From the NCBI RefSeq assembly GCF_006345805.1, contig NW_021831966.1, forward strand, positions 1 to 33,725: a stretch of DNA of 33,725 bases, written 5' to 3'. The DNA comes from Octopus sinensis (Eukaryota). The notes beneath the pieces are model-generated. The model did no database searches and was not told the DNA's origin. It saw nothing but the letters and a program-made list of their open reading frames with translations. A program made the position numbers and the translations under genes. Of the stretch, positions 2,928-32,641 are shown in pieces; within the stretch, counting starts at the first letter, position 1, and the number at the start of each line of letters is the position of its first letter.

Positions 2928-2949
2928 TATAAACACACATGCATATATA

Positions 2950-3112
2950 TATAGATGTGATGGACTTCCTCAGAGTTTCCGTCGACCAAATACACTCCCA
3001 AGGCACAAGTCGCCCCGAGGCTAGAAAGAAACAGTTGACCAAGGTGCCACGTATTGGGAGTGAACCGAAAACCACGCAGCTGCAAAGCGTGCTTCTTCAC
3101 TACAGCCTGCGT
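2950..3112 (-). mobile_element. SINE S1, old diverged 5' half
   Basis: CCAAGGTGCCACG, CCGAGGCTA and GTTTCCGTC motifs in S1 order. Confidence 0.65.
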
Positions 3113-3669
3113 GCGACTACGCATAAAGGGCATGTTCTCGCTTTGCATTATATATAGCTTACAGCCCAACACGTATTTTAATTACACTTATGTTCCTACA
3201 AACCCACTAACAACGACCGAAAATACGGACGCCATCACAATTATATTTTCCCTCTGTTTTTCCCTTAGATGTGATTAGCTCATTGCTTTCGCTCAATCGA
3301 TATCTATTGGGTTAGTATTCTTCATCGACTTCAACTTTGGCACAGTTCTGGGGAAACCTGATGTTATATCTGATGTTTAATGCAATTTCGTGTACGAGTT
3401 TTTTGTATTTTTTTTTCTTGTAAGCTAGTGTCAAATTAGTATATGCCTTGATTGGAGAAATCGTGTATAGAAGTTTTTCTTTGATCATGGGAATAATATA
3501 AAATCGCGAGCAACAGACAGAACAATATTTTATTATGGCGGTGTGAAATATAACGATTAAAAAAATATACGATCATGTTATGAAACATATACATACATAC
3601 ATCGATCTATGCATCCATTCATACATATAATATATATATATATATATACACACATTTGAGTACACATAT

Positions 3670-3905
3670 TCTTTTCTTTTATTCTTATATTTGTTTCAGT
3701 CATTTTAGCAGAAACAATCGACCCCAGGACTTATTGTTCGTAAGCCTAGTACATATTCTATTGGTCTATTTTGTCGAACCGCTAGTTAAGGTCCCGTAAA
3801 CACACTAACATCGATTGACAAGCGATGGTGGGGGGGATAAATACAGACACAAAAAACATACACACACACACACATATATATACGACGGGCTTCTTCCAGT
3901 TTTGT
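3670..3905 (-). mobile_element. SINE S1, 3' half
   Basis: TGTTTCAGTCATTT...CGACCCCAGGACTTATT...TACGACGGGCTTC matches the S1 tail and body. Confidence 0.75.
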
Positions 3906-6420: not shown

Positions 6421-8510
6421 AATTATGTACATACACAACAAATTTCTTGCAGTTTCCGTCTACCACATCAATTGATATCCTTCTAAGCAAACACTAGAGT
6501 GTGCATATGATTTAAAATGCATTCAACCTTTCTAGACTACGGTACAAGAAGTCACATATATGTACGTGTGCTTGTGTTTGTGTAAACTGTTACTTTAAGA
6601 TAAGGTTATCCGTAATAGGATGAGTTTATGCATCTGGATAGCAAAAGTTGCATTATATTTATGTATAGCATAATAACTATACTGGTCATTGAGTATAGAT
6701 ATTATACTTTTCATAATCTCTATACGCTTCGTTATGTAGCTCAGTGTAATGCGGCTTATGCATAAATGATAAGTTACAAGCGTTAATCCTTATGTGGGTA
6801 ATTAAGGTAACATAACCTCCGCAAGGAATAGCTGAATGAAATGCATCAGTAGACCACGGAAGTCAACGAAATTCAACTATTTTCGGTACAGTTTCCAACC
6901 AAAATTCGTCGGTGTTACACTAATATAAATACGAAAATACAATAACAATAACAGGACATTAATATAGTGTTGTATAGTTTATAAATTGTATTCTTATTAC
7001 AACAATGTTGCTTGTTACTTCTGAAACTATTGGTAGGTTTTGGATATGCACTATGTATCGTCCCTCAATTCGTAAATAATAATATTGCTTAGCTCATCGA
7101 GAACAATAATTAATACTTGTTTTCTTTATATTAATGATTTCTATCGATTCACTAGATTCTCCCTCCCATAATATGCGAGTAACTATCATTATTTAACTTC
7201 AAATCTGGATGCCCCTAAAAAATTAGTAACTAGTAATATAAACTTAAGGCTGCAAATGCGATAACCAAAATACCCCATAGATATCTATTTAGGCTATAGT
7301 AATGGAAATCAAATTTACAATTTTTTAAAAAATTTTAGTGGTAACGAGATTGAACTGTAAAATATGTATTCATTCAACAGCCAAGTTGATTTAATTTCTT
7401 AAAAGTATTCTAAGACATTCTGAAAATGCCTATTTTGAAACAACTTGCCTACATTGAAACAGCACCTCTCTCACTAGAAAATAGGTTTGTAGTTGCTAAC
7501 GATTTCATTTGAAACAATGCGACTGTGGTTGACTTTCAATTAGTAAAAATAGCAAGCTAGTTGGTACACAAATTAGTTGTAAGATTGTAATGTAATTTCA
7601 TTATAACATTGTAGTGTGGTTTAATCATTTAATTGATGATAGCAATCAATAGCTTCTCTCTCCAATCGGGAATTCATCTTTAATGAGAATGTATTTGTGT
7701 CCGATTCTATACCAAGAATATTCCACTAATATTCAACCCTCTTCTTGGTTCAACATAATATTTCTTGTGAAAAATAAAATACAGTAATAAATCTCCACCA
7801 CTATCGAGTTTCGCAAACACGAATGCTTTTAATACTTGTGGGGAAAATCAAACATACACTCGTAACAAACTGGAAGAAAGTTACAGAAATACTTTTCATT
7901 ATTGGAAATAATATGAGTGTTTTGGCAAAACCGTTAGAATGACAGATGAAATTCCTTGGGGTATTGCTTCCTATTTCTCTTATTATGGATTGGTACAATT
8001 TTATCGATACAAATAGATAAAAGGAAGCGAAGCTGACCTCAACAAGGTTTTATCTTGAACTACCGATGTTCGAAAGCGATATCTTGGGGCATCCTGTCCA
8101 TCACTTTGACGATTTTACCAATTTATCTTTGTATTTGTGTTATGGAAATCGTGAAATCAAATATATATTTCAAGCATTCGAATACCAGTTATTGTAATAC
8201 AACGAAACACACTTCAATCTCTCTGTCACTTGTTCCTCAAATAGAAATAATACATACATATATAAATACATATATGCATACATAAAAGCATATATACATG
8301 CATGCATGCATACATACATACATACATACATACATACAAAACGCAAATTCTTTATTCATATGCTACAAATGATCAGGATATTTGGGATTATACAAAACTG
8401 CAAGACCTTGAGGTCTAAAGGACATTGGATAGAAGAAGATGCTTTCTTTCACAACCTTGCTACGAAGAGGTAACCGGTCAAAATGTACTCTAAATTAAAA
8501 ATAGGACTTT

Positions 8511-10424: not shown

Positions 10425-10803
10425 CTGGTTTCAGATTTCGAGGGAAGGGTTAGGTCAAGTCGATTACATTAAGTGCTTGGCTGGTTCTTATTTTATCGAA
10501 CCCGAAAATATGAGTGGCAAAGTACAGACGGAAGAAATATCCGTTTCTACTCTAGTCACAAGGCCCGAAATTTTTGGGGAGAGGGGCAGTCGATTAGAGC
10601 GACCCCAGTACTGGTACTGGCAACTGGTACTTAATTTATCAACCCCGAAAGGATGAAAGGCAAAGTCGACCTCGGCGGAATTTGAACTCAGAACGTAAAG
10701 ACAGACGAAATACCTATTTCTTTATTACCCTCAAGGGGCTAAACACGGAAGGGACAAACAAAGACAGACAAACGGATTAAGTCGATTACATCGACCCCAG
10801 TGC
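10425..10803 (-). mobile_element. SINE S2 headless composite of two to three bodies
   Basis: CCCGAAAGGATGAAAGGCAAAGTCGACCTCGGCGGAATTTGAACTCAGAACG plus flanking partial bodies with different tails. Confidence 0.8.
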
Positions 10804-10811
10804 GCAACAGG

Positions 10812-10952
10812 GTTCGTTATCATCCCCTGCCAGTCTCGTGGGTATTTAGGTATTTTCGCTCAATAAACACTCACAATGACCGGTCTGGGAATCGAAGCAG
10901 ATATTCTAGGACTGCAAATCGGCTGCTCTAACCAGTATGTTATTGTGCCTCC
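10812..10952 (-). mobile_element. SINE S3, diverged 5' fragment
   Basis: TCGCTCAATAAACACTCACAATGACCGGTCTGGGAATCGAA. Confidence 0.75.
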
Positions 10953-11485: not shown

Positions 11486-12069
11486 TATTTCTTTCTGCCA
11501 TAGACACAAAGTCTGAAATTTTTGGGGAGGAGGATAATGAATTATATCGACCCCCGTGTTCGACTGATACTTATTTCATGAACCCTAAAAGAACGAAAGA
11601 CAAAGTCAACCGCAGTAGTATATGAATTCAGAACGTAAAACCGGATGAAATACCTGTTTCTTTATTACCCACAAGGGGCTAAACATAGAGGGAACAAACA
11701 AGGACAGACAGAATGATTAAGTTGATTACATCGACCCCAGTGCGTAACTGGTACTTAATTTATCGACCCCGAAAGGATGAAAGGCAAAGTCGACCTCGGC
11801 AGAATTAGAACTCAGAAGGTAGCGGCAGACGAAATACCTGTTTCTTTATTACCCACAAGGAGCTAAACACAGAGGGGACAAACAAGGACAGACAGACGGA
11901 TTAAGTCGATTACATCGACCCCAGTGCGTAACTGGTACTTAATTTATCGACCCCGAAAGGATGAAAGGCAAAGTCGACCTCGGCGGTATTTGAACTCCGA
12001 ACGTTGCGGCAGACGAAATACCGCTAAGCATTTTATCCGGCGTGCAGACGATTCCGTCAAATCACCGCC
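11486..12069 (-). mobile_element. SINE S2, head plus three bodies
   Basis: GAAATAC junctions at 12015, 11831 and 11647 (184-bp spacing). The last body has a different tail. Confidence 0.88.
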
Positions 12070-14016: not shown

Positions 14017-14072
14017 GTATGTATATATATTTATAATGATAATGTATGTGTATGTATGCATTTATATGTATG

Positions 14073-14112
<40 letters not shown>

Positions 14113-17660: not shown

Positions 17661-17685
17661 AATTGACAGGCACCTGAGTGGCTGT

Positions 17686-17740
17686 GTGGTAAGAAGCTTA
17701 ATTCCCAACCACATGGCTCCCAGTTTAGTCCCACTGCATA
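17686..17740 (+). mobile_element. SINE S1 head fragment, interrupted by an S2 copy
   Basis: GAGTGGCTGTGTGGTAAGAAGCTT...AGTCCCACTGC. Confidence 0.7.
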
Positions 17741-17937
17741 GCCCGAAATTTTTTTTTTGGGGGGGGGGGCCAGTCGATTACATTGGCCCCAGTACGTAAC
17801 TGGTACTTAATTTATCGACCCCGAAAGGATGAAAGGCTAAGTTGATCTCAGCGGAATTTGAACTCAAAACATAAAGACAGACGAAATAGCGCTAAGCATT
17901 TCGCTCGGCGTGCTAACGGTTCTGCCAGCTCGCCGCC
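17741..17937 (-). mobile_element. SINE S2, single copy
   Basis: Reverse complement of head GGCGGCGAGCTGGCAGAA plus body. Confidence 0.88.
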
Positions 17938-18355
17938 TGAACGATCGATGATAATTACTTCCAAAATTTACGACATGTTACGTGTCTATATATTTGAGTT
18001 AGAAGAATCAACGAGCTAGCAGAACCATTAACGGTAGAATAAAGCACCAGGTTAGTACAAGAGTCGATGTAATCTACTTACCCACTCTACATAAAATCTC
18101 TGGTTCTGTGCCAAAATTTCAAAGGATATATTTGGATCAGACTTTTCCTTACATAAACAAGCATTTGCATTTATACAATCTATTAATACAGATTATAAAC
18201 ACTAAAGTCTGTTAAGTAAATCACCAACGTTTTGTGAGTCTCGTTCAACAGTATGTCACCCGTTCAACCACAGTTGCTGCATTATTGTTTAGCTAATTGA
18301 CTGATAAACACAAACTGAGGATGTAGTTAGAGCGTTTGATGGAGTAGCTGAGAGA

Positions 18356-18570
18356 AGGGCGGCGTGCTGGCAGAAACGTTAGCACGCCGGGCGAAATATT
18401 TAGCAGTATTTCGTCTGCCGCTACGTTCTGAGTTCAAATTCCCCCGAGGTCGACTTTGCCGTTCATCCTTTCCGGGTCGATAAATCAAGTACCAGTTGCG
18501 TATTGGGGTCGATCTAATCGACTGGACCCCTGCCACCCAAATTTCAGGCCTTGTGCCTGGAGTAGAAAAG
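18356..18570 (+). mobile_element. SINE S2 with 18-bp TSD, inserted in an older S2-like copy that continues to about 18720
   Basis: GATGGAGTAGCTGAGAGA (18338-55) and GATGGAATAGCTGAGAGA (18571-88) flank the copy. Confidence 0.88.
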
Positions 18571-18817
18571 GATGGAATAGCTGAGAGACTGTTTCCAAGC
18601 ACCTGCACTCTGAGTTCAAATACAGGTGAGGTTAAATCTACAGCTCATCCATTTGAGGTCGATAAAAAATATATCCATCTGGGGCAGTGATTTAATGGAA
18701 CTGTCGGAAACCCTCAGCTTGATACCATACGGCATTTGATCTAGCGACTTAATTTCTGAGATCAAATCCCGTTTTTTACCTACTTTATTGGGAGACTTAA
18801 TCTATTTAAATGCCTCG

Positions 18818-19053
18818 AAAGCGGCGAGCTGGCAGAAACGTTAGCACGCCGGGCGAAATGCGTAGCCGTATTTCGTGTGCCGTTACGTTCTGAGTTCAAA
18901 TTCTGCCGAGGTCGACTTTGCCTTTCATCCTTTCGGGGTCGATTAAATAAGTAGCAGTTACGCATTGGGGTCGATATAATCGACTTAATCCTTTTGTCTG
19001 CTGTCCTTGTTTGTCCCCTCTACGTTTAGCCCCTTGTGGGCAGTAAAGAAATA
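18818..19053 (+). mobile_element. SINE S2 with 21-bp TSD
   Basis: TTAATCTATTTAA(A/G)TGCCTCG at 18797-18817 and 19054-19074. Confidence 0.92.
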
Positions 19054-20269: not shown

Positions 20270-21240
20270 GGCGACGGGCTGGCAGAGACGTTAGCACGCC
20301 GGGCGAAATGCTTAGCAGTATTTCGTCTGCCGCTACGTTCTGAGTTCAAATTCCGCCGAGGTCGACTTTGCCTTTCATCCTTTCGGGGTCGATTAAGTAA
20401 GTACCAGTGACGCACTGGTGTCGATGTAATCGACTTAATGAGTTTGTCTGTCCTTGTTTGTCCTCTCTGTGTTTAGCCCCTTGCGGGTAGTAAAGAAATA
20501 GGTATTTCGTCTGCCGCTACGTTCTGAGTTCAAATTCCGCCGAGGTCGACTTTGCCTTTCATCCTTTCGGGGTCGATTAAGTAAGTACCAGTGACGCACT
20601 GGTGTCGATGTAATCGACTTAATGAGTTTCTCTGTCCTTGTTTGTCCTCTCTGTGTTTAGCCCCTTGCGGGTAGTAAAGAAATAGGTATTTCGTCTGCCG
20701 CTACGTTCTGAGTTCAAATTCCGCCGAGGTCGACTTTGCCTTTCATCCTTTCGGGGTCGATTAAGTAAGTACCAGTGACGCACTGGTGTCGATGTAATCG
20801 ACTTAATGAGTTTCTCTGTCCTTGTTTGTCCTCTCTGTGTTTAGCCCCTTGCGGGTAGTAAAGAAATAGGTATTTCGTCTGCCGCTACGTTCTGAGTTCA
20901 AATTCCGCCGAGGTCGACTTTGCCTTTCATCCTTTCGGGGTCGATTAAGTAAGTACCAGTGACGCACTGGTGTCGATGTAATCGACTTAATGAGTTTGTC
21001 TGTCCTTGTTTGTCCTCTCTGTGTTTAGCCCCTTGCGGGTAGTAAAGAAATAGGTATTTCGTCTGCCGCTACGTTCTGAGTTCAAATTCCGCCGAGGTCG
21101 ACTTTGCCTTTCATCCTTCCAGGGTCGATTAAATAAGTACCAGTTACGTACTGGGGTCGATATAATCGACTTAATCCGGTTGTCCGTCCTTGTTTGTCCC
21201 CTCCGTGTGTAGCCTCTGGTGGGCAGTAAAGAAAGAAGAA
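20270..21240 (+). mobile_element. SINE S2 (Meta-domain-like) with one head and five tandem 184-bp bodies
   Basis: GTATTTCGTCTGCCGCTACG recurs at 20318, 20502, 20686, 20870 and 21054. Body contains GCCTTTCATCCTTTCGGGGTCGAT..AAGTACCAG, which resembles the MetaSINE domain (from memory). Confidence 0.92.
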
Positions 21241-22147: not shown

Positions 22148-22539
22148 TCTCTCTATATATAAAGCTGAAGTTGTCTGTGTATGGCAGGTTTGGTAGCCTT
22201 CAACTAACACTATCTCCACCGAGACCCTGCGGCGCAAGTTGACCAAAATTCAGAGTATGATAGAAGGAGGCTTGCTCTTCCTTCCGTAAAAGAAAAAAGT
22301 CAAATCGAACCATGTTAACACCAAAAATTAGTTACATCAAAAAGGTGCTTTTTTTCTATGAAAATCCCCATTTTTTACGATTTTTTGACTGCTGTGTCGC
22401 CATTTTTCGGTGTATTTCAACCAGAAAAATGTTCACTTAAAGAGAATAACAAGCTACATAATGCAAAAGTTTTACTTTTCAAAAATTCCAATTCTAAAGG
22501 GTCGGAACAAACCCGAGCAACGCCGGGTGATACTGCTAG
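22148..22539 (+). mobile_element. Non-autonomous Helitron
   Basis: A|TC 5' end (TCTCTCTATATATAAAGCTGAAGTTGTCTGT), subterminal hairpin CCCGAGCAACGCCGGG 22512-22527, and CTAG|T 3' end at 22536-22540. Confidence 0.8.
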
Positions 22540-23380
22540 TATGAAATAAAACTAAAAGCTGGACAAAATTGTAAATCAGAACATAAAGTTACGCAACGAA
22601 TACGAACATGTCTTATTTTTGAAACTCAACCGATGTTACCATGGAATCGAAATTTCTTCAGAATATGAAAGAACTACCGTATAAGTTAATGTAATCGAAA
22701 GCAAGTTATACTCATTATATTCGCCCAGCCAATTATCAAAACCAACGATGTTACATGACATGAACTATTCAATATACAATCTTATTCGAAGACAATTTAT
22801 GGCCGACAATATTCAAAATTTAGTGATAGTTTTACCGCCGATGTTGCTGTTATTTCGTGGCCACAAATAAATTCTGATCGAACAGAGATTGTCGATCCAC
22901 CAATGACGGTAAAACCCGATATACCTCTTTGACAAATATCACATGAATCAATGACTGAAGAATATTATGCGCAGCTCCATATAAAGTGATGAACTAAACT
23001 TCCGGGGTGAAACCATATGCATGTTGTAACTACACGACTTCGACATCGCGACAAAGTTATTCTGAAAATCAATCAACCATAAGAAATTTAAAACAAAAAA
23101 ATTTTTCTTCCACAAATGCAACAATCTGTTCAGCAACCAAATATTTCATTCGTCTGTTTTCTGTTGTATTATCGTACATTCATTCCTTAGCGTCAAATGA
23201 CAGCAGATTCTACTGCTGCTTGTTCCACATAAAATACGTTATATGTAGAAGAGCATTGCAAACAAGGCGATGGTTTTTCTTTTTAACCAACTATAGAAAG
23301 ATTTCTACTTCGGAAAAATCCAGTAAATATTTTGAGCTTGCCCCTTCAAGAAGCACATTTTTACTGATACTTACTAGATA

Positions 23381-23815
23381 GGCGCAGGAGTGGCTGTGTG
23401 GTAAGTAGCTTGTTTACCAACCACATGGTTACGGGTTCAGTCCCACTGCGTGGCACCAGGGCAAGTGTCTTCTACTATAGCCTCGGGCCGACCAAAGCCT
23501 TCTGAGTGGATTTGGTAGACGGAAACTGAAAGAAGCCCGTCGTATATATGTGTATATATATAAGTATATACGTGTGCGTGTATGTTTGTGTGTCTGTGTT
23601 TGTCCCCCCTAGCATTGCTTGACAACCGATGCTGGTGTGTTTATGCCCCCGTCACTTAGCGGTTCGGTAAAAGAGACCGATAGAATAAGTACTGGGCTTA
23701 CAAAGAGTAAGTCCCGGGGTCGAGTTGCTCGATTAAAGGCGGTGCTCCAGCATGGCCGCAGTCAAAAGACTGAAACAAGTAAAAGAGTAAAAGAGTAAAA
23801 GAGTAAAAGAGTAAA
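23381..23815 (+). mobile_element. SINE family S1 (tRNA head, CORE-like domain, internal microsatellite, GAGTAAAA tail), full length
   Basis: Head GGCGCAGGAGTGGCTGTGTGGTAAG, B-box-like GGGTTCAGTCCC, CORE-like GGCACC..GGGCAAGTGTCTT, tail (GAGTAAAA)n. Confidence 0.9.
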
Positions 23816-24152
23816 TTACCTAACATTACATATAGAAATACATAAATAAATACATGCATAGGTACGCAGATACATGCATACATACACACTAATACACACT
23901 AATACACACATATGTATGAATGGATGCACCCATGAGCCTGGCTAGGCTTCAAAAGGGCGCATAACATAACATAACATTGTTCAAGCACGTCATGGTTTAC
24001 TCTGAGTTAGTTCCCTTCACACCTTTTCATTTCGCATACATATACACATACATAGATACGTAATACTTAACCACATACATGAGCACTACAAGCATACGTA
24101 CATATATACATACTTCATGCATGCACGCATACATACATGCATACATACATAT

Positions 24153-24190
<38 letters not shown>

Positions 24191-24192
24191 AT

Positions 24193-24570
24193 CTTTTACT
24201 CTTTTACTTGTTTCAGTCATTTGACTGCGGCTATGCTGGAGCACCGCCTTTAGTCAAGCAACTCGACCCCGGGACTTATTCTTTGTAAGCCCAGTACTTA
24301 TTCCATCGGTCTCTTATGCCGAACCGCTAGGTGACGGGGACATAAACACACCAGCATCTGTTGCCAAGCAATGCTAGGGGGACAAACACAGACACACACA
24401 CATATATATATACATATATACGACGGGCTTCTTTTCCGCCTACCAAATCCATTCACACGGCTTTGGTCGGCCCGAGGCTATTGTAGAAGACACTTGCCCA
24501 AGGTGCCACGCAGTGGGACTGAACCCGGAACCATGTGGCTGGTAAGCAAGCTACTTACCACACAGCCACT
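24193..24570 (-). mobile_element. SINE S1, near full length
   Basis: Reverse complement of the 23381-23815 copy. Confidence 0.9.
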
Positions 24571-24716
24571 GGTTAATTCCGTAATGGAATCGGCGGCTTA
24601 TATTTATTTGCTGCCGATAAATTTGGCGCGAGTGCGATGATTTGAAAATTTTAGGTCAGATATTGCCGAGGCAGGGACGGGAATGCCTCGTGAAAAATAT
24701 CTGTTCCGACTTGGCT

Positions 24717-24823
24717 ATTTCTTACTGATGAATCTAAGGGCCTATGGTGGATTGGCTTGATTTAATTTAATCAGGTTAGTTTACCATTAAACAGTAGATG
24801 AAACGGTGCATCGTATAAGAAAT
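24717..24823 (+). ncRNA. Intact type I hammerhead ribozyme motif
   Basis: Helix I ATTTCTTA (24717-24724)/TAAGAAAT (24816-24823), 8 bp. Core CTGATGA 24725-24731. Helix II ATCTA (24732-36)/TAGAT (24795-99) closes a long G.U-rich hairpin. GAAAC 24800-04, near-palindromic helix III ACGGTGCATCGT, cleavage triplet GTA 24813-15. All conserved core nucleotides are present. Confidence 0.85.
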
Positions 24824-25033
24824 TACAGGGTAAATGTTTTTTAATTTTCTCCTGGTTTACGGAATTGATGTTATTTTGCGGTTAAAGCTTTTGGCTGTTA
24901 TTTCTAGTGGGTGAATGGCCTATTATGGCCGTTCCTTGATTGTGATATATATATATATATATATACAAAGGAGAATATTGTAGTTCGCTTAAAGCAGTTT
25001 GATTGTTTGCAAACAATAGTAATGAATAGTAAT

Positions 25034-25114
25034 ATAACAACAATGGACTATAATAACTGGTTGTAATTTAATTTAATCATCCATACACCTGTTATTATAG
25101 TCCATTGTTGTTAT
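25034..25114. repeat. Perfect 24-bp inverted repeat with 33-nt spacer
   Basis: ATAACAACAATGGACTATAATAAC / GTTATTATAGTCCATTGTTGTTAT. Confidence 0.9.
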
Positions 25115-25239
25115 TATAGTGCATTGTGTGCCATTCAAAACACATTACTATATATATATATATATATATATATAGATATATATATATATATATATTAATT
25201 ATATTATATTATATTATATTATATTATATTATATTATAT

Positions 25240-25848
25240 TATATAGAGGGCATTATTACACATAAATGCCGCACGCGAGGAGGGACTCTTAAAATCAAAA
25301 CTACTAAAATATTTAAAACATCGTCCTAAATGCAACGCTCGAAGCAAGCCATTTAAAAACAGAATTCAGCTGCAGATCACTGTGATTCGTAATCAGTGTA
25401 GTGGTGCACTCTTTACTCATCAGTGCAAGCATAATTTAAGATTTATAATAAATGAACAAAATCAACATACCAAACGAATAGCCATCGTATCCGACGTAGT
25501 GTATAGAAATGTTCACCCCTTATACATCTATGTAAATGGCGGGCGTTTTCGAATTACATTTCGGTAACAACGTGCTGATTCTGAATAAAAATTCAGTACT
25601 CAATATAAACTGGTTAAATTTACAATTTAAAAATAGGATAAAATCTTTATAAGAATTTATCAAGTATTCAGCGTGAAAAACCTCATAAGAGAAAAAAAAT
25701 CCACCAATTTTTTCACTTAAGTATATTTATTTATATTATATAGAGAACATTATTACACATAAATGCCACATGCTAGGAGGGACTTATGAGGTTTTTAATG
25801 CTGACTACTTGATAGATTCTTATAAAGATTTTATCCTATTTTTAAATT
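25240..25848. repeat. Direct repeat pair (25240-25287, 25735-25785) and 66-bp inverted repeat pair (25624-25689, 25783-25848)
   Basis: CATTATTACACATAAATGCC..AGGAGGGACT occurs twice. AAAAATAGGATAAAATCTTTATAAGAAT..AAAAACCTCATAAG occurs in both orientations. Confidence 0.85.
25371..25427 (-). ncRNA. Type I hammerhead motif, one A missing from GAAA
   Basis: Minus strand reads TGCA-CTGATGA-GTAA-AG-AGTG(caccacta)CACT-GA-TTAC-GAA-TCAC-A-GTGA-TC-TGCA. Helices I, II and III all pair and the triplet is ATC. Only the GAAA run is one A short. Confidence 0.7.
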
Positions 25849-26066
25849 TGGTTATCATCTGTAGTGGATGGTCTGCCTGATCGCTCTTTATCAATAAGGA
25901 TACAATCTCCATCTCGGAACCTTATGAACCACTTCCGTACGGTTCTTTCGGATAAAGAAACGTCGCTATTAACTGCGCATATTTCTTTGGTTGCTTGTGA
26001 GGCATTTTTCCCTTTACGGAAAAAGAAAAGCATCAAGTGCCAGAAATGAACTTTCTTATCTTCCAT
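25842..26066 (-). pseudogene. Mariner transposase N-terminal HTH fragment, 74 aa
   Basis: MEDKKVHFWHLMLFFFRKGKNASQATKEICAV...LSERTVRKWFIRFRDGD...DKERSGRP matches the mariner HTH domain and the RSGRP motif. It ends where another repeat begins; no DD34D domain. Confidence 0.88.
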
Positions 26067-26250
26067 TTTAAAGGGTTACAGAATTAACACAGGTTATAGG
26101 AACATAAACCTTCATCCACTAAAAGATAGCTTAAACTGTGCTCTAAATGGAGGTGTAGTCAAATCCTATTTTATGGATTCAACCATGCTCTAAAATAAGA
26201 CGAAACGTAAGCTACTATAAATCGGCACGAACTTTCCAGACAATCCAATA
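25842..26250 (-). mobile_element. Truncated mariner transposon (5' TIR plus N-terminal transposase)
   Basis: Minus strand starts TA-TTGGATTGTCTGGAAAGTTCGTGCCGATTT, a mariner-type TIR at 26219-26248 with TA at 26249-50. The downstream ORF is mariner-like. No right TIR seen. Confidence 0.88.
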
Positions 26251-26769
26251 TATATATTTATTTATATATATTTATGTGTGAGTCTGTGTGCGTGTGTGTG
26301 TGTCTGTGTGTGTGTGTATTTGTGTGCTTTTTGTGTTTGTGTGTGTATGTGTGTGCGACTGTGTACGTGTGAGGACGCGTGCTTATACTTTTAGTCGGAG
26401 AGAGACGAAGACAAATACAAAGACAAAGATATGTAGAAACACGTACAAGTAATTTTATATTGTTGTATGTGTATGTTGTCTAGGTTAATCTCCTATTCAG
26501 AGAACTGGCCTCGCATCTATGTCTTACATCTCATCAAAATCTCTGAAGAACAAAAGCGCTGATAACAAAATCTAGTTCCGAAAACAATATACAATGGATT
26601 TCATAAGAGGTGTTGATAGAAATGTCGACACTCCTACAGGTATTTTACTTGTGAACAGGTATCGCTTACAGACGGTTGATATTTACATAATGAGCTAAGA
26701 ATTGGTTTAGTTATTTGAACATCAAAGAAACAATACACCGATTGTCTGGTAGCAACACGTTAAACCTCG

Positions 26770-26778
26770 TATATGTAT

Positions 26779-26856
<78 letters not shown>

Positions 26857-26932
26857 GCATATATATATATGTATGTAATTGTATATATATATATAATAAT
26901 ATATATATATATGTATGTATATATATATATAT

Positions 26933-26967
<35 letters not shown>

Positions 26968-27055
26968 TGGATATATATATATATATACATATATATATAT
27001 TATATATCCATATCTATCTATCTATCTCTCTCTATATATATACATACATATATAC

Positions 27056-27897: not shown

Positions 27898-27991
27898 ACA
27901 GGAGTGGCTGTGTGGTAAGTAGCTTGCTTACCAGCCACATGGTTCCGGGTTCAGTCCCACTGCGTGGCACCTTGGGCAAGTGTCTTCTACA
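27898..27991 (+). mobile_element. SINE S1, 5' fragment
   Basis: CAGGAGTGGCTGTGTGGTAAG...GGCACCTTGGGCAAGTGTCTTCTAC, then (GT)n. Confidence 0.85.
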
Positions 27992-31280: not shown

Positions 31281-31453
31281 GGCGTAGGAGTGGCTGTGTA
31301 GTAAGTAACTTGCTTACCAACCACATGGCTCCTGGGTCAGTGCCACTTTGTGGCATCTTGAGCAAGTGTCTTCCGCTATAGCCTCGGGCCGACCAAAACC
31401 TTGTGAGTGGATTTGGTAGACGGAAACTCAAAGAAGCCCGTCGTATATAAGTA

Positions 31454-31488
<35 letters not shown>

Positions 31489-31499
31489 GTGTGTGTGTG

Positions 31500-31532
<33 letters not shown>

Positions 31533-31735
31533 TTGTTTGTTTGTTTGTGTGTTTGTCCTCCTAGCATTGCTTGACAACCGATGCTGGTGTGTTTACGTCC
31601 CCGTAACTTAGCGCAAAAGAGCCTGATAGAATAAGTACTAGGGTTACAAAGAATAAGTCCTGGGGTCGATTTGCTCGACTAAAGGCGGTGCTCCAGCATG
31701 GTTACAGTCAAATGACTGAAACTAGTAAAAGAGAA
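31281..31735 (+). mobile_element. SINE S1, full length
   Basis: Same head, body and tail as 23381-23815. Confidence 0.9.
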
Positions 31736-32641
31736 ATAGAGAGTATACCTACACACACACACCCATATATATGCGTGTATACGCAAATATATCATTATAT
31801 ATATGGAATGTTTATCTTACCACTCGAAATCCAATGTACCGTATACGTTACACCATCATACACATATACACACACATACACACACCCACAGACACACACA
31901 GACACAGACACACACACACACACACAAACACACATATATATATATATGCATGCACAGTCATATTCCCTTCCGCTCAATTTCTCTATCTACAAGCTCACAT
32001 CTGTTCATTAAAATATATTAAAATTTCCAAATGGAATTTCCAGATCACCATCAATAAATGATAATTAATTACTGTATAAATGTATCAAATTACACATGAT
32101 ATGTTATCCAACTGACTACAACATGCTTAGCGATTAACGCGTTGTGAATATAGTTTCTTTACTTCTATATAACGTAAAATTTACCAACATTATTTTATTG
32201 ACTGAAGTTACACTGCTAAATTATACTCAGGGTATATATTATAGTTAGGATTGATTTCCAAAGAAGCCTTTAGCAAATTCATATATTCTTATCGAAAGTT
32301 TTCAGCTCATATACTTCTTAACAATGATTTTATTAAAAATTATGTAAATATTCTTATCGTTTTCTTCACACCTTATTTTAGTCTACTTAACTTCGGTGAA
32401 CGATATCTGTAACACAATTTTTTGAAATGTTAGATAAACGACGCAAGTAGACTTGTTTCTTCAACCAGACCAAAAATATCTGTTTTTAACACTTGATGGA
32501 TGAAAAATCAATATGGACTTAGCCTCGGGGAGAAGCTAATCGTAGTGAGAATAACGAAAGTCTGTGTATCTTTGTGACAATATGTGTACGTGTATATGTG
32601 AGCCGCTACATGCAAAAATTTTGTGCAGTTAGAGAAAGAAG

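What the first reader, a model, noticed from the sequence alone, without database searches (positions are those of the whole stretch)
24717..24823. Fully intact hammerhead with an extended G.U-rich helix II
Seen: every conserved core nucleotide, an 8-bp helix I, a GTA cleavage site (predicted cut after 24815), and a helix II extended by ATGGT/ACCAT, GGATTGGC/GTTAGTTT (pairs only if G.U is allowed) and TTGATT/AATCAG. Wobble-dependent pairing points to structure at the RNA level on the + strand rather than a DNA palindrome. Inference: this is the best candidate in the window for an active ribozyme.
Basis: partly seen in the sequence, partly recalled or inferred. Interest (0 to 1): 0.85.

Follow-up and report, generated by a model that had tools for sequence, protein, structure and literature searches.

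The report
Lone hammerhead ribozyme motif, unproven
The plus strand at 24717-24823 does spell out a complete type I hammerhead self-cleaving RNA motif with a long wobble-paired hairpin grafted onto one arm, but it is a single unconfirmed copy of a kind of element already known in thousands of copies in animal genomes.

Summary
24717-24823 (+) contains both core boxes (CUGAUGA, GAAA), the A15.1-U16.1 pair and a GUA cleavage site (cut after 24815). Helix I has 8 bp, helix II has 5 bp plus a 19-bp distal hairpin with six G.U pairs, and helix III has 4 bp with a palindromic UGCA loop. It is the only hammerhead-like site in the window.

Chance expectation per window is 2e-5 (iid null) to 2e-4 (order-3 Markov null). 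That still means roughly 1-20 chance sites in a multi-gigabase genome.

Weaknesses:
- The most conserved helix pair, G10.1-C11.1, is A-U here.
- Rfam models do not reach threshold.
- The monomer's lowest-energy fold sequesters the core, and helix III alone is marginal (-0.2 kcal/mol).
- There is no tandem partner, no second copy and no Penelope-type reverse transcriptase or endonuclease nearby.
- No relatives could be retrieved, because the accessible collections do not cover this genome.

Two copies fold into a textbook double hammerhead (-80.3 versus -66.8 kcal/mol), as in newt, Penelope-like-element and retrozyme hammerheads.

Best reading: a solitary type I hammerhead descended from retroelement-borne ribozymes, with unproven and probably weak activity. 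Chance remains a serious rival. It is a new member of a known kind, of modest interest.

The parts
24717..24724 (+). Helix I, 5' strand (AUUUCUUA). Helix I is the open helix, which makes this a type I topology.
   Evidence: 8 contiguous Watson-Crick pairs with 24816-24823. The pairing is kept in every predicted fold.
24725..24731 (+). Core box C3 U4 G5 A6 U7 G8 A9 (CUGAUGA).
   Evidence: It is the only CTGANGA site in the window that is followed by helices fitting the descriptor.
24732..24736 (+). Helix II, proximal 5' strand (AUCUA). Position 10.1 is A.
   Evidence: pairs with UAGAU 24795-24799. The 10.1-11.1 pair is A-U rather than the usual G-C.
24737..24743 (+). 5' side of the 7x7 internal loop in helix II (AGGGCCU).
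   Evidence: It lies 5 bp from the core, roughly where loop 2 sits in canonical type I hammerheads. Any tertiary role is untested.
24744..24787 (+). Distal extension of helix II: a 19-bp hairpin (24744-62 / 24769-87) with loop UAAUUU, made of 13 WC + 6 G.U pairs and no mismatch.
   Evidence: It is the only complex-sequence, wobble-rich hairpin in the window. On the - strand the six wobbles become C.A mismatches.
24788..24794 (+). 3' side of the helix II internal loop (UAAACAG).
24795..24799 (+). Helix II, proximal 3' strand (UAGAU). Position 11.1 is U.
24800..24803 (+). Core box G12 A13 A14 plus A15.1 (GAAA).
24803..24814 (+). Helix III: ACGG / UCGU (A15.1-U16.1, C-G, G-C, G.U) closed by the palindromic loop UGCA. 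The whole 12-mer is self-complementary.
   Evidence: the hairpin is worth -0.2 kcal/mol and the self-duplex -17.5 kcal/mol.
24815..24816 (+). Predicted scissile bond: A17 (24815) | U1.1 (24816). The cleavage triplet is GUA.
   Evidence: Follows from the position of the helices and the standard hammerhead numbering. No experimental evidence.
24816..24823 (+). Helix I, 3' strand (UAAGAAAU).

Best explanation
This is a solitary type I hammerhead ribozyme motif on the + strand of repeat-rich, non-coding DNA that looks like an animal genome. It most likely descends from the type I hammerheads carried by metazoan retroelements (non-LTR retrozymes or Penelope-like elements). Its helix II has been enlarged by a 19-bp hairpin that pairs only at the RNA level.

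If the + strand is transcribed, helices I-III would bring C3-A9 and G12-A14 around the GUA site. The RNA would then cleave itself by internal transesterification between A24815 and U24816, leaving a 2',3'-cyclic phosphate and a 5'-OH.

Helix III is weak and fully self-complementary. The efficient form is therefore predicted to be a double hammerhead made from two copies of the RNA, as in newt satellite, PLE and retrozyme hammerheads. The lone monomer is expected to cleave slowly, if at all.

Shown here: the motif, its strand specificity, its rarity by chance, and the monomer and dimer energetics. Inferred: the descent from retroelements, transcription, and any catalysis.
For: - All core nucleotides, A15.1-U16.1, an H17 cleavage site and three helices of 8, 5(+19) and 4 bp are present.
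- It is the only hit in the window, even with relaxed helices or one core mismatch.
- Chance expectation per window is 1.7e-5 (iid) to 2.4e-4 (order-3 Markov).
- The structure is strand-specific: z = -5.2 on + and -2.3 on -.
- The distal hairpin has 6 G.U, 0 A.C and 0 other mismatches in 19 pairs, on the same strand as the core. If it were a DNA palindrome decaying by symmetric transitions, the chance of this is (1/2)^6 = 0.016. The neighbouring palindrome 25034-25114 is Watson-Crick with one T.T mismatch.
- Helix III with its loop is a self-complementary 12-mer. The MFE of two copies is exactly a double hammerhead with both cores unpaired, at -80.3 versus 2 x -33.4 kcal/mol.
- That matches published metazoan type I hammerheads: a short helix III, a palindromic 2-4 nt loop, and activity as dimers (PMC4209133; PMC7229834).
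- The same papers report thousands of such motifs per invertebrate genome, low G+C, and many scattered single copies.
- The window fits that setting: 34% G+C, SINEs, microsatellites and a mariner remnant.
Against: - 10.1-11.1 is A-U, whereas G-C is highly conserved in canonical and PLE hammerheads.
- Helix II carries a 58-nt insertion not described for those families.
- Rfam hammerhead models score far below threshold.
- The monomer MFE pairs UGAUG of the core with CAUCG of helix III. The hammerhead fold is 2.9 kcal/mol above the MFE.
- No tandem repeat, second copy or partial copy exists in 33.7 kb.
- No RT or GIY-YIG remnant lies within about 2.3 kb on either side.
- No conserved loop-loop contact can be recognised.
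- No homologue was retrieved, so there is no covariation or conservation evidence.
- At genome scale, roughly 1-20 sites this good are expected by chance. Experts discard singletons that fit no family.
Confidence: 0.55

Rival explanations
1. This is a chance match. An AT-rich stretch that already contained an inverted repeat happens to carry CTGATGA and GAAA at the right places, with short complementary flanks. It has no ribozyme history and no function.
For: - The motif is simple. The order-3 Markov null gives about 19 sites at the observed helix lengths per 5.4e9 positions, and about 250 at helix lengths 6, 4 and 3 bp. The iid null gives 1.4 and 93.
- Perreault et al. warn that consensus matches arise by chance in large databases.
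- The copy is single and has no retroelement context.
- 10.1-11.1 is atypical.
- Rfam scores are sub-threshold.
- Helix I is almost pure A/U, which is cheap in 34% G+C DNA.
- Inverted repeats are common nearby.
Against: - The expectation for this one window is only 2e-5 to 2e-4.
- Three features outside the descriptor also fit real metazoan hammerheads: the palindromic loop 3 with a self-complementary helix III, the double-hammerhead MFE, and a wobble-only hairpin on the same strand as the core (6 G.U, 0 A.C, no transversion mismatch).
Confidence: 0.3
2. This is a host-domesticated, single-copy hammerhead inside a host transcript (intron, UTR or lncRNA) that processes that RNA. It would be analogous to the isolated intronic hammerheads of amniotes. 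The long helix II hairpin would act as a regulatory or protein-binding module.
For: - Isolated, non-tandem type I hammerheads with roles in mRNA biogenesis are known in amniotes (cited in PMC7229834).
- The copy is solitary and lies in sequence unique within the window.
- The wobble-only hairpin suggests RNA-level constraint.
Against: - No exon or gene was detected anywhere near. No ORF in the window has protein-like features, and Pfam finds only a mariner remnant.
- No conservation data are available.
- The flanks show no significant extra structure.
- The weak monomer fold argues against an efficient cis-acting ribozyme.
Confidence: 0.1
3. The functional unit is the hairpin 24744-24787 alone, for example a small-RNA precursor or a relic of a foldback or MITE element. 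The hammerhead-like boxes around it would be incidental.
For: - The hairpin supplies most of the folding signal.
- A second hairpin 300 nt downstream (25034-25114) shares the apical 14-mer ATTTAATTTAATCA.
Against: - A 19-bp stem is too short for a canonical animal miRNA precursor (established knowledge).
- Rfam miRNA hits there are noise: mir-577 at 13.7 bits, E = 6.8.
- The 14-mer match scores only marginally above the window background (28 versus 25).
- This reading does not explain the 8-bp helix I, helix III or the exact core spacing.
Confidence: 0.05

Closest known systems
Canonical type I hammerheads of metazoan non-LTR retrozymes and satellite repeats (newt satellite 2, Schistosoma, coral, mussel, axolotl; PMC7229834)
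   Same: - Type I topology.
- Full catalytic core.
- Short helix III capped by a palindromic tetraloop, so two copies can form a double hammerhead.
- AT-rich surroundings.
- Invertebrate-like repeat landscape.
   Different: - Those sit in tandem repeats of 150-450 bp with one ribozyme per unit. Here there is one copy and no tandem array.
- They have a helix II of about 4 bp closed by a small loop that contacts loop 1, and G10.1-C11.1. Here helix II is 5 bp, then a 7x7 loop, then 19 bp, and it starts with A-U.
- Helix I here is an uninterrupted 8 bp with no recognisable loop 1.
Minimal hammerheads in the pseudo-LTRs of Penelope-like elements (Cervera and de la Pena 2014, PMC4209133)
   Same: - Type I topology.
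- Often found as scattered single motifs from truncated elements.
- Helix II longer than usual.
- Palindromic 15.2-16.2 and loop 3.
- Low monomer activity, with dimers proposed.
   Different: - PLE motifs usually have almost no helix III, an extra unpaired base between A9 and 10.1, and a conserved G10.1-C11.1. None of these is seen here.
- No RT or GIY-YIG remnant lies beside it.
Isolated intronic hammerheads of amniotes (Rfam HH9/HH10)
   Same: A single-copy type I motif that is not in a tandem array.
   Different: - Those are ultraconserved and sit in known introns.
- They pass their Rfam models. This one passes no Rfam model.
- This one has no known gene context.

Membership tests
Hammerhead ribozyme (any type) | Unpaired core C3 U4 G5 A6 N7 G8 A9 and G12 A13 A14. 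| tested here: met
   CUGAUGA at 24725-31 and GAA at 24800-02.
Hammerhead ribozyme (any type) | An A15.1-U16.1 pair followed by H17 (not G) at the cleavage site. | tested here: met
   A24803-U24814 pair, and A24815 as H17. The triplet is GUA.
Hammerhead ribozyme (any type) | Three helices radiating from the core with correct connectivity. | tested here: met
   Helix I has 8 bp, helix II has 5 bp (+19), helix III has 4 bp.
Hammerhead ribozyme (any type) | A G10.1-C11.1 pair at the base of helix II. This is near-invariant but not absolute. | tested here: not met
   A24732-U24799. Conservation is stated in PMC3088659 and PMC4209133. Natural compensatory changes at this pair exist in cave-cricket satellites (PMC2837043).
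Hammerhead ribozyme (any type) | Reaches the curated Rfam gathering score of a hammerhead covariance model. | tested here: not met
   No hit at gathering thresholds. Hammerhead_3 scores 12.4 bits against 48.5, with E = 8.2, in a wrong (type III) register. The 58-nt helix II insertion is a likely cause, but that was not tested.
Hammerhead ribozyme (any type) | Tertiary contact between helices I and II (loop-loop or pseudoknot) for activity at physiological Mg2+. | tested here: inconclusive
   No recognisable loop 1. A possible 4-bp pairing joins GGCU 24713-16 with GGCC 24739-42 in the helix II internal loop (read), but it is no better than chance.
Hammerhead ribozyme (any type) | Site-specific self-cleavage. 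| not testable with these tools
   Needs in vitro transcription or RNA-end mapping.
Hammerhead ribozyme (any type) | Homologues showing a conserved core and covarying helices. | tested here: inconclusive
   Nothing related was found. The controls show the collections do not cover this genome.
Metazoan non-LTR retrozyme | Head-to-tail tandem repeats of about 150-450 bp, each carrying a type I hammerhead. | tested here: not met
   No tandem array covers 24571-24944. There is no second copy in the window and no second hammerhead.
Metazoan non-LTR retrozyme | Low G+C content and a highly self-paired monomer RNA. | tested here: inconclusive
   The window is 34% G+C. Outside the ribozyme, the flanks fold only modestly better than shuffles, with z about -2 on both strands and no long-range closure.
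Penelope-like element (pLTR hammerhead) | An adjacent ORF with a telomerase-like RT and a GIY-YIG endonuclease, flanked by direct repeats that carry the ribozyme. | tested here: not met
   Pfam on six frames of about 22400-26880 finds only HTH_48 of a mariner remnant. No protein-like ORF exists elsewhere in the window. No direct repeat of the ribozyme region was found.

The most novel reading that the evidence does not exclude
The locus is a single-copy hammerhead whose helix II has been rebuilt into a 19-bp hairpin that pairs only in RNA.

Two versions of this reading remain open:
- It is a host-retained ribozyme with a regulatory arm.
- It is a retrotransposed ribozyme RNA carrying the footprint of A-to-I hyper-editing of its double-stranded arm. 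All six wobble G's would restore A-U pairs if read as former A's, and each would then have had a 5' U or A neighbour (read).

Either version would tie self-cleaving RNAs to RNA editing or to host RNA processing in an invertebrate.
Probability: 0.07. Interest if true: 0.65.

Novelty: new member of a known kind. Interest (0 to 1): 0.3.

Why it matters
If it cleaves, it adds one more type I hammerhead to the many thousands already catalogued in animal genomes. It has two unusual traits: an A-U pair at 10.1-11.1 and a very long, wobble-rich helix II. Together these would slightly widen the descriptors used to search for such ribozymes.

It would matter more only if it proved to be conserved or expressed as a single-copy host element. 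As it stands, it mainly illustrates that a perfect consensus match in a large AT-rich genome is not by itself proof of a ribozyme.

Tried and rejected
1. Rfam at gathering and E-value thresholds. There was no usable hammerhead hit. The many miRNA 'hits' are TA/TG microsatellites.
2. tRNA scan. Nothing found.
3. Exact and gapped DNA patterns in the metagenome, prokaryotic-genome and viral collections. The 17 loci returned are chance matches, mostly inside what look like bacterial coding sequences, with no helix I or III.
4. Six-frame translation of 24575-24943 against 5.8e9 protein clusters. Nothing found. The positive control with the window's abundant SINE-derived ORF was also empty, and window ORFs are not on record. 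These negatives therefore say nothing about copy number in the source genome.
5. Literature search for strings of the SINE and the 184-bp repeat, to identify the organism. Nothing found. My recollection that the SINE resembles a cephalopod SINE stays unverified.
6. PLE body next to the ribozyme. Rejected.
7. Retrozyme tandem array. Rejected.
8. A long-range stem closing helix I (24654-24708 with 24860-24896), predicted in larger folds. It is not better than shuffled flanks (z = -1.1).
9. Homology between the helix II hairpin and the palindrome at 25034-25114. Only a shared 14-mer, marginal.
10. The type III register proposed by the Rfam Hammerhead_3 alignment. It has many non-canonical pairs and is rejected in favour of the type I register.

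Full report
**What is there.**

- Helix I: AUUUCUUA (24717-24724) pairs with UAAGAAAU (24816-24823), 8 Watson-Crick pairs.
- Core box: CUGAUGA (24725-24731).
- Helix II: starts with AUCUA/UAGAU (24732-36 / 24795-99) and opens into a 7x7 internal loop (AGGGCCU / UAAACAG).
- Distal hairpin: 19 contiguous pairs (24744-62 / 24769-87, loop UAAUUU), of which six are G.U.
- Core box: GAAA (24800-03).
- Helix III: ACGG/UCGU closed by UGCA (24803-14).
- A17 is 24815, so the scissile bond is 24815|24816.

Helices II and III are closed and helix I is open, so this is a type I hammerhead.

One qualification applies to 'every conserved core nucleotide'. The first pair of helix II (10.1-11.1) is A-U. G-C at this position is described as the most conserved pair after A15.1-U16.1 (PMC3088659) and as a hallmark of genuine metazoan motifs (PMC4209133).

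**Is it more than chance?**

I wrote a hammerhead descriptor requiring CUGANGA, a helix II closing up to 130 nt, GAAA, a helix III beginning with A-U, H17, and a helix I. It finds this site and nothing else on either strand at relaxed limits of 4, 3 and 2 bp. Allowing one core mismatch changes nothing.

| Null model | Sequence simulated | Per window, helices ≥8, 5, 4 bp | Per window, helices ≥6, 4, 3 bp |
|---|---|---|---|
| iid, window composition | 4 Gb | 1.7e-5 | 1.2e-3 |
| Order-3 Markov trained on the window | 1.1 Gb effective | 2.4e-4 | 3.1e-3 |

The site is therefore very unlikely to be accidental in this particular window. Scaled to a multi-gigabase genome of this composition, though, about 1-20 equally good sites, and about a hundred or more looser ones, would arise by chance. 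That is the caveat Perreault et al. raise.

**Strand and RNA-level structure.**

The + strand folds to -33.4 kcal/mol (z = -5.2). The - strand folds to -17.4 (z = -2.3).

The distal hairpin has 13 WC and 6 G.U pairs, with no A.C and no transversion mismatch. It is the only hairpin of that kind in the window outside microsatellites. The palindrome 300 nt downstream (25034-25114) contrasts with it: it is 27/28 Watson-Crick with a T.T mismatch, which is a DNA-level repeat.

Suppose the hairpin were a decaying DNA palindrome. The chance that all six transitions give wobbles on the strand that also carries the core is (1/2)^6, about 0.016. This is modest but independent support for an RNA-level history on the + strand.

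**Would it fold and cut?**

- The nearest-neighbour MFE of the monomer keeps helices I and II. However, it pairs UGAUG of the core with CAUCG of helix III.
- The hammerhead secondary structure lies 2.9 kcal/mol higher. States with the core unpaired are about 2% of the ensemble. These models ignore the tertiary energy of the core.
- Helix III alone is worth only -0.2 kcal/mol, but its 12-mer ACGGUGCAUCGU is fully self-complementary (duplex -17.5 kcal/mol).
- The MFE of two copies is precisely the classical double hammerhead: exchanged helix I strands, a 12-bp helix III and both cores free. It scores -80.3 against -66.8 kcal/mol for two monomers.

This matches what is described for most metazoan type I hammerheads, which have a short helix III, a palindromic 2-4 nt loop and activity as dimers. 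Here no second copy is available in cis.

**Context.**

The window has 34% G+C and is full of microsatellites, SINE copies and two 184-bp tandem arrays. It has no protein-like ORF, which looks like non-coding animal DNA.

The ribozyme lies in a 374-bp stretch (24571-24944) between the head of a minus-strand SINE and a (TA)n tract. That stretch has no other copy in the window by blastn with 7-mers or by nhmmer.

Pfam on all six frames of about 22400-26880 finds only the HTH_48 domain of a mariner remnant (25845-26075, minus strand). It finds no reverse transcriptase and no GIY-YIG nuclease.

The flanks show no significant pairing that would close helix I or build a rod-like RNA.

The site is therefore neither a tandem retrozyme nor part of an intact Penelope-like element. 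At best it is a stray single copy. The literature says this is how most PLE-type motifs occur.

**Relatives.**

None could be obtained:
- Exact and gapped patterns in the metagenome, prokaryotic and viral collections returned only chance hits, mostly inside what look like bacterial coding sequences.
- A six-frame protein query of the 374-bp unit found nothing.
- A control with the window's abundant SINE-derived ORF also found nothing, and window ORFs are not on record.

The collections evidently do not contain this genome's non-coding DNA, so these negatives are uninformative. Conservation, copy number and covariation remain untested. They are the decisive missing evidence.

**Verdict.**

| Reading | Probability |
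|---|---|
| Genuine but solitary type I hammerhead of the retroelement-borne metazoan kind, with an unusually long, RNA-specific helix II; predicted to work best as a dimer and only weakly alone | about 0.55 |
| Chance match around a pre-existing hairpin | about 0.3 |
| Domesticated single-copy ribozyme | about 0.1 |
| Hairpin as the real unit | about 0.05 |

Even if it is real, it is a new member of a well-known class. Interest is modest.

Noticed in passing
window 24189-24570 (-), 23389-23797 (+), 31289-31740, 27903-27991, 17677-17737; diverged copies at 2933-3107 and 3589-3895: There are several copies of a tRNA-related SINE of about 380 bp with microsatellite tails. One copy's head ends 147 nt upstream of the ribozyme, on the opposite strand. 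From memory it resembles a cephalopod SINE, but I could not verify this.
   Followed up: partly
window 11541-12022 and 20318-21234 (opposite orientation); scattered units near 10598-10928, 17846-18016, 18330-18644, 18783-19019: A 184-bp unit forms tandem arrays of 2.6 and 5.0 copies (85% and 97% matches). It contains a tRNA T-arm-like motif (GAGTTCAAATTCC) and recurs across the window. ARAGORN calls no tRNA, and no hammerhead core is present.
   Followed up: partly
window 25845-26075 (-), with repeats 25624-25689 / 25783-25848 (inverted) and 25225-25287 / 25722-25784 (direct): This is a remnant of a mariner/Mos1-type transposase N-terminus (Pfam HTH_48, E = 9e-18). It is truncated by stops and surrounded by short inverted and direct repeats.
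   Followed up: partly
window 25034-25114: This is a near-perfect 28-bp inverted repeat (27/28 WC, z = -7.6). Its apical region shares the exact 14-mer ATTTAATTTAATCA with the apex of the ribozyme's helix II hairpin (24760-24773). The match is only marginally above the window background.
   Followed up: partly
window 24837-24842: A run of six T's lies 14 nt downstream of the 3' end of helix I. It would act as a Pol III terminator if the motif were in a Pol III transcript. No convincing A or B box was seen upstream (read).
   Followed up: no
window 24713-24716 with 24739-24742: GGCU, immediately 5' of helix I, could pair with GGCC in the helix II internal loop (3 WC + 1 G.U). That would be a possible helix I / helix II pseudoknot of the kind described for some hammerheads, but four pairs are expected by chance (read).
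   Followed up: no
whole window, e.g. 8255-8331, 14044-14112, 26947-27031: Dozens of sub-threshold Rfam 'miRNA' matches (mir-297, mir-3149, mir-1277, mir-466) all fall on TA/TG/TATG microsatellites. They are low-complexity artefacts.
   Followed up: yes
minus strand at about 33548 and 6386; also about 30968 and 14795: Two pairs of CTGATGA/CTGAGGA-containing segments have similar flanks (for example ACAACTGATGAAGGG..GTTC.CTTT). They look like copies of other repeats. None has helices fitting a hammerhead.
   Followed up: partly
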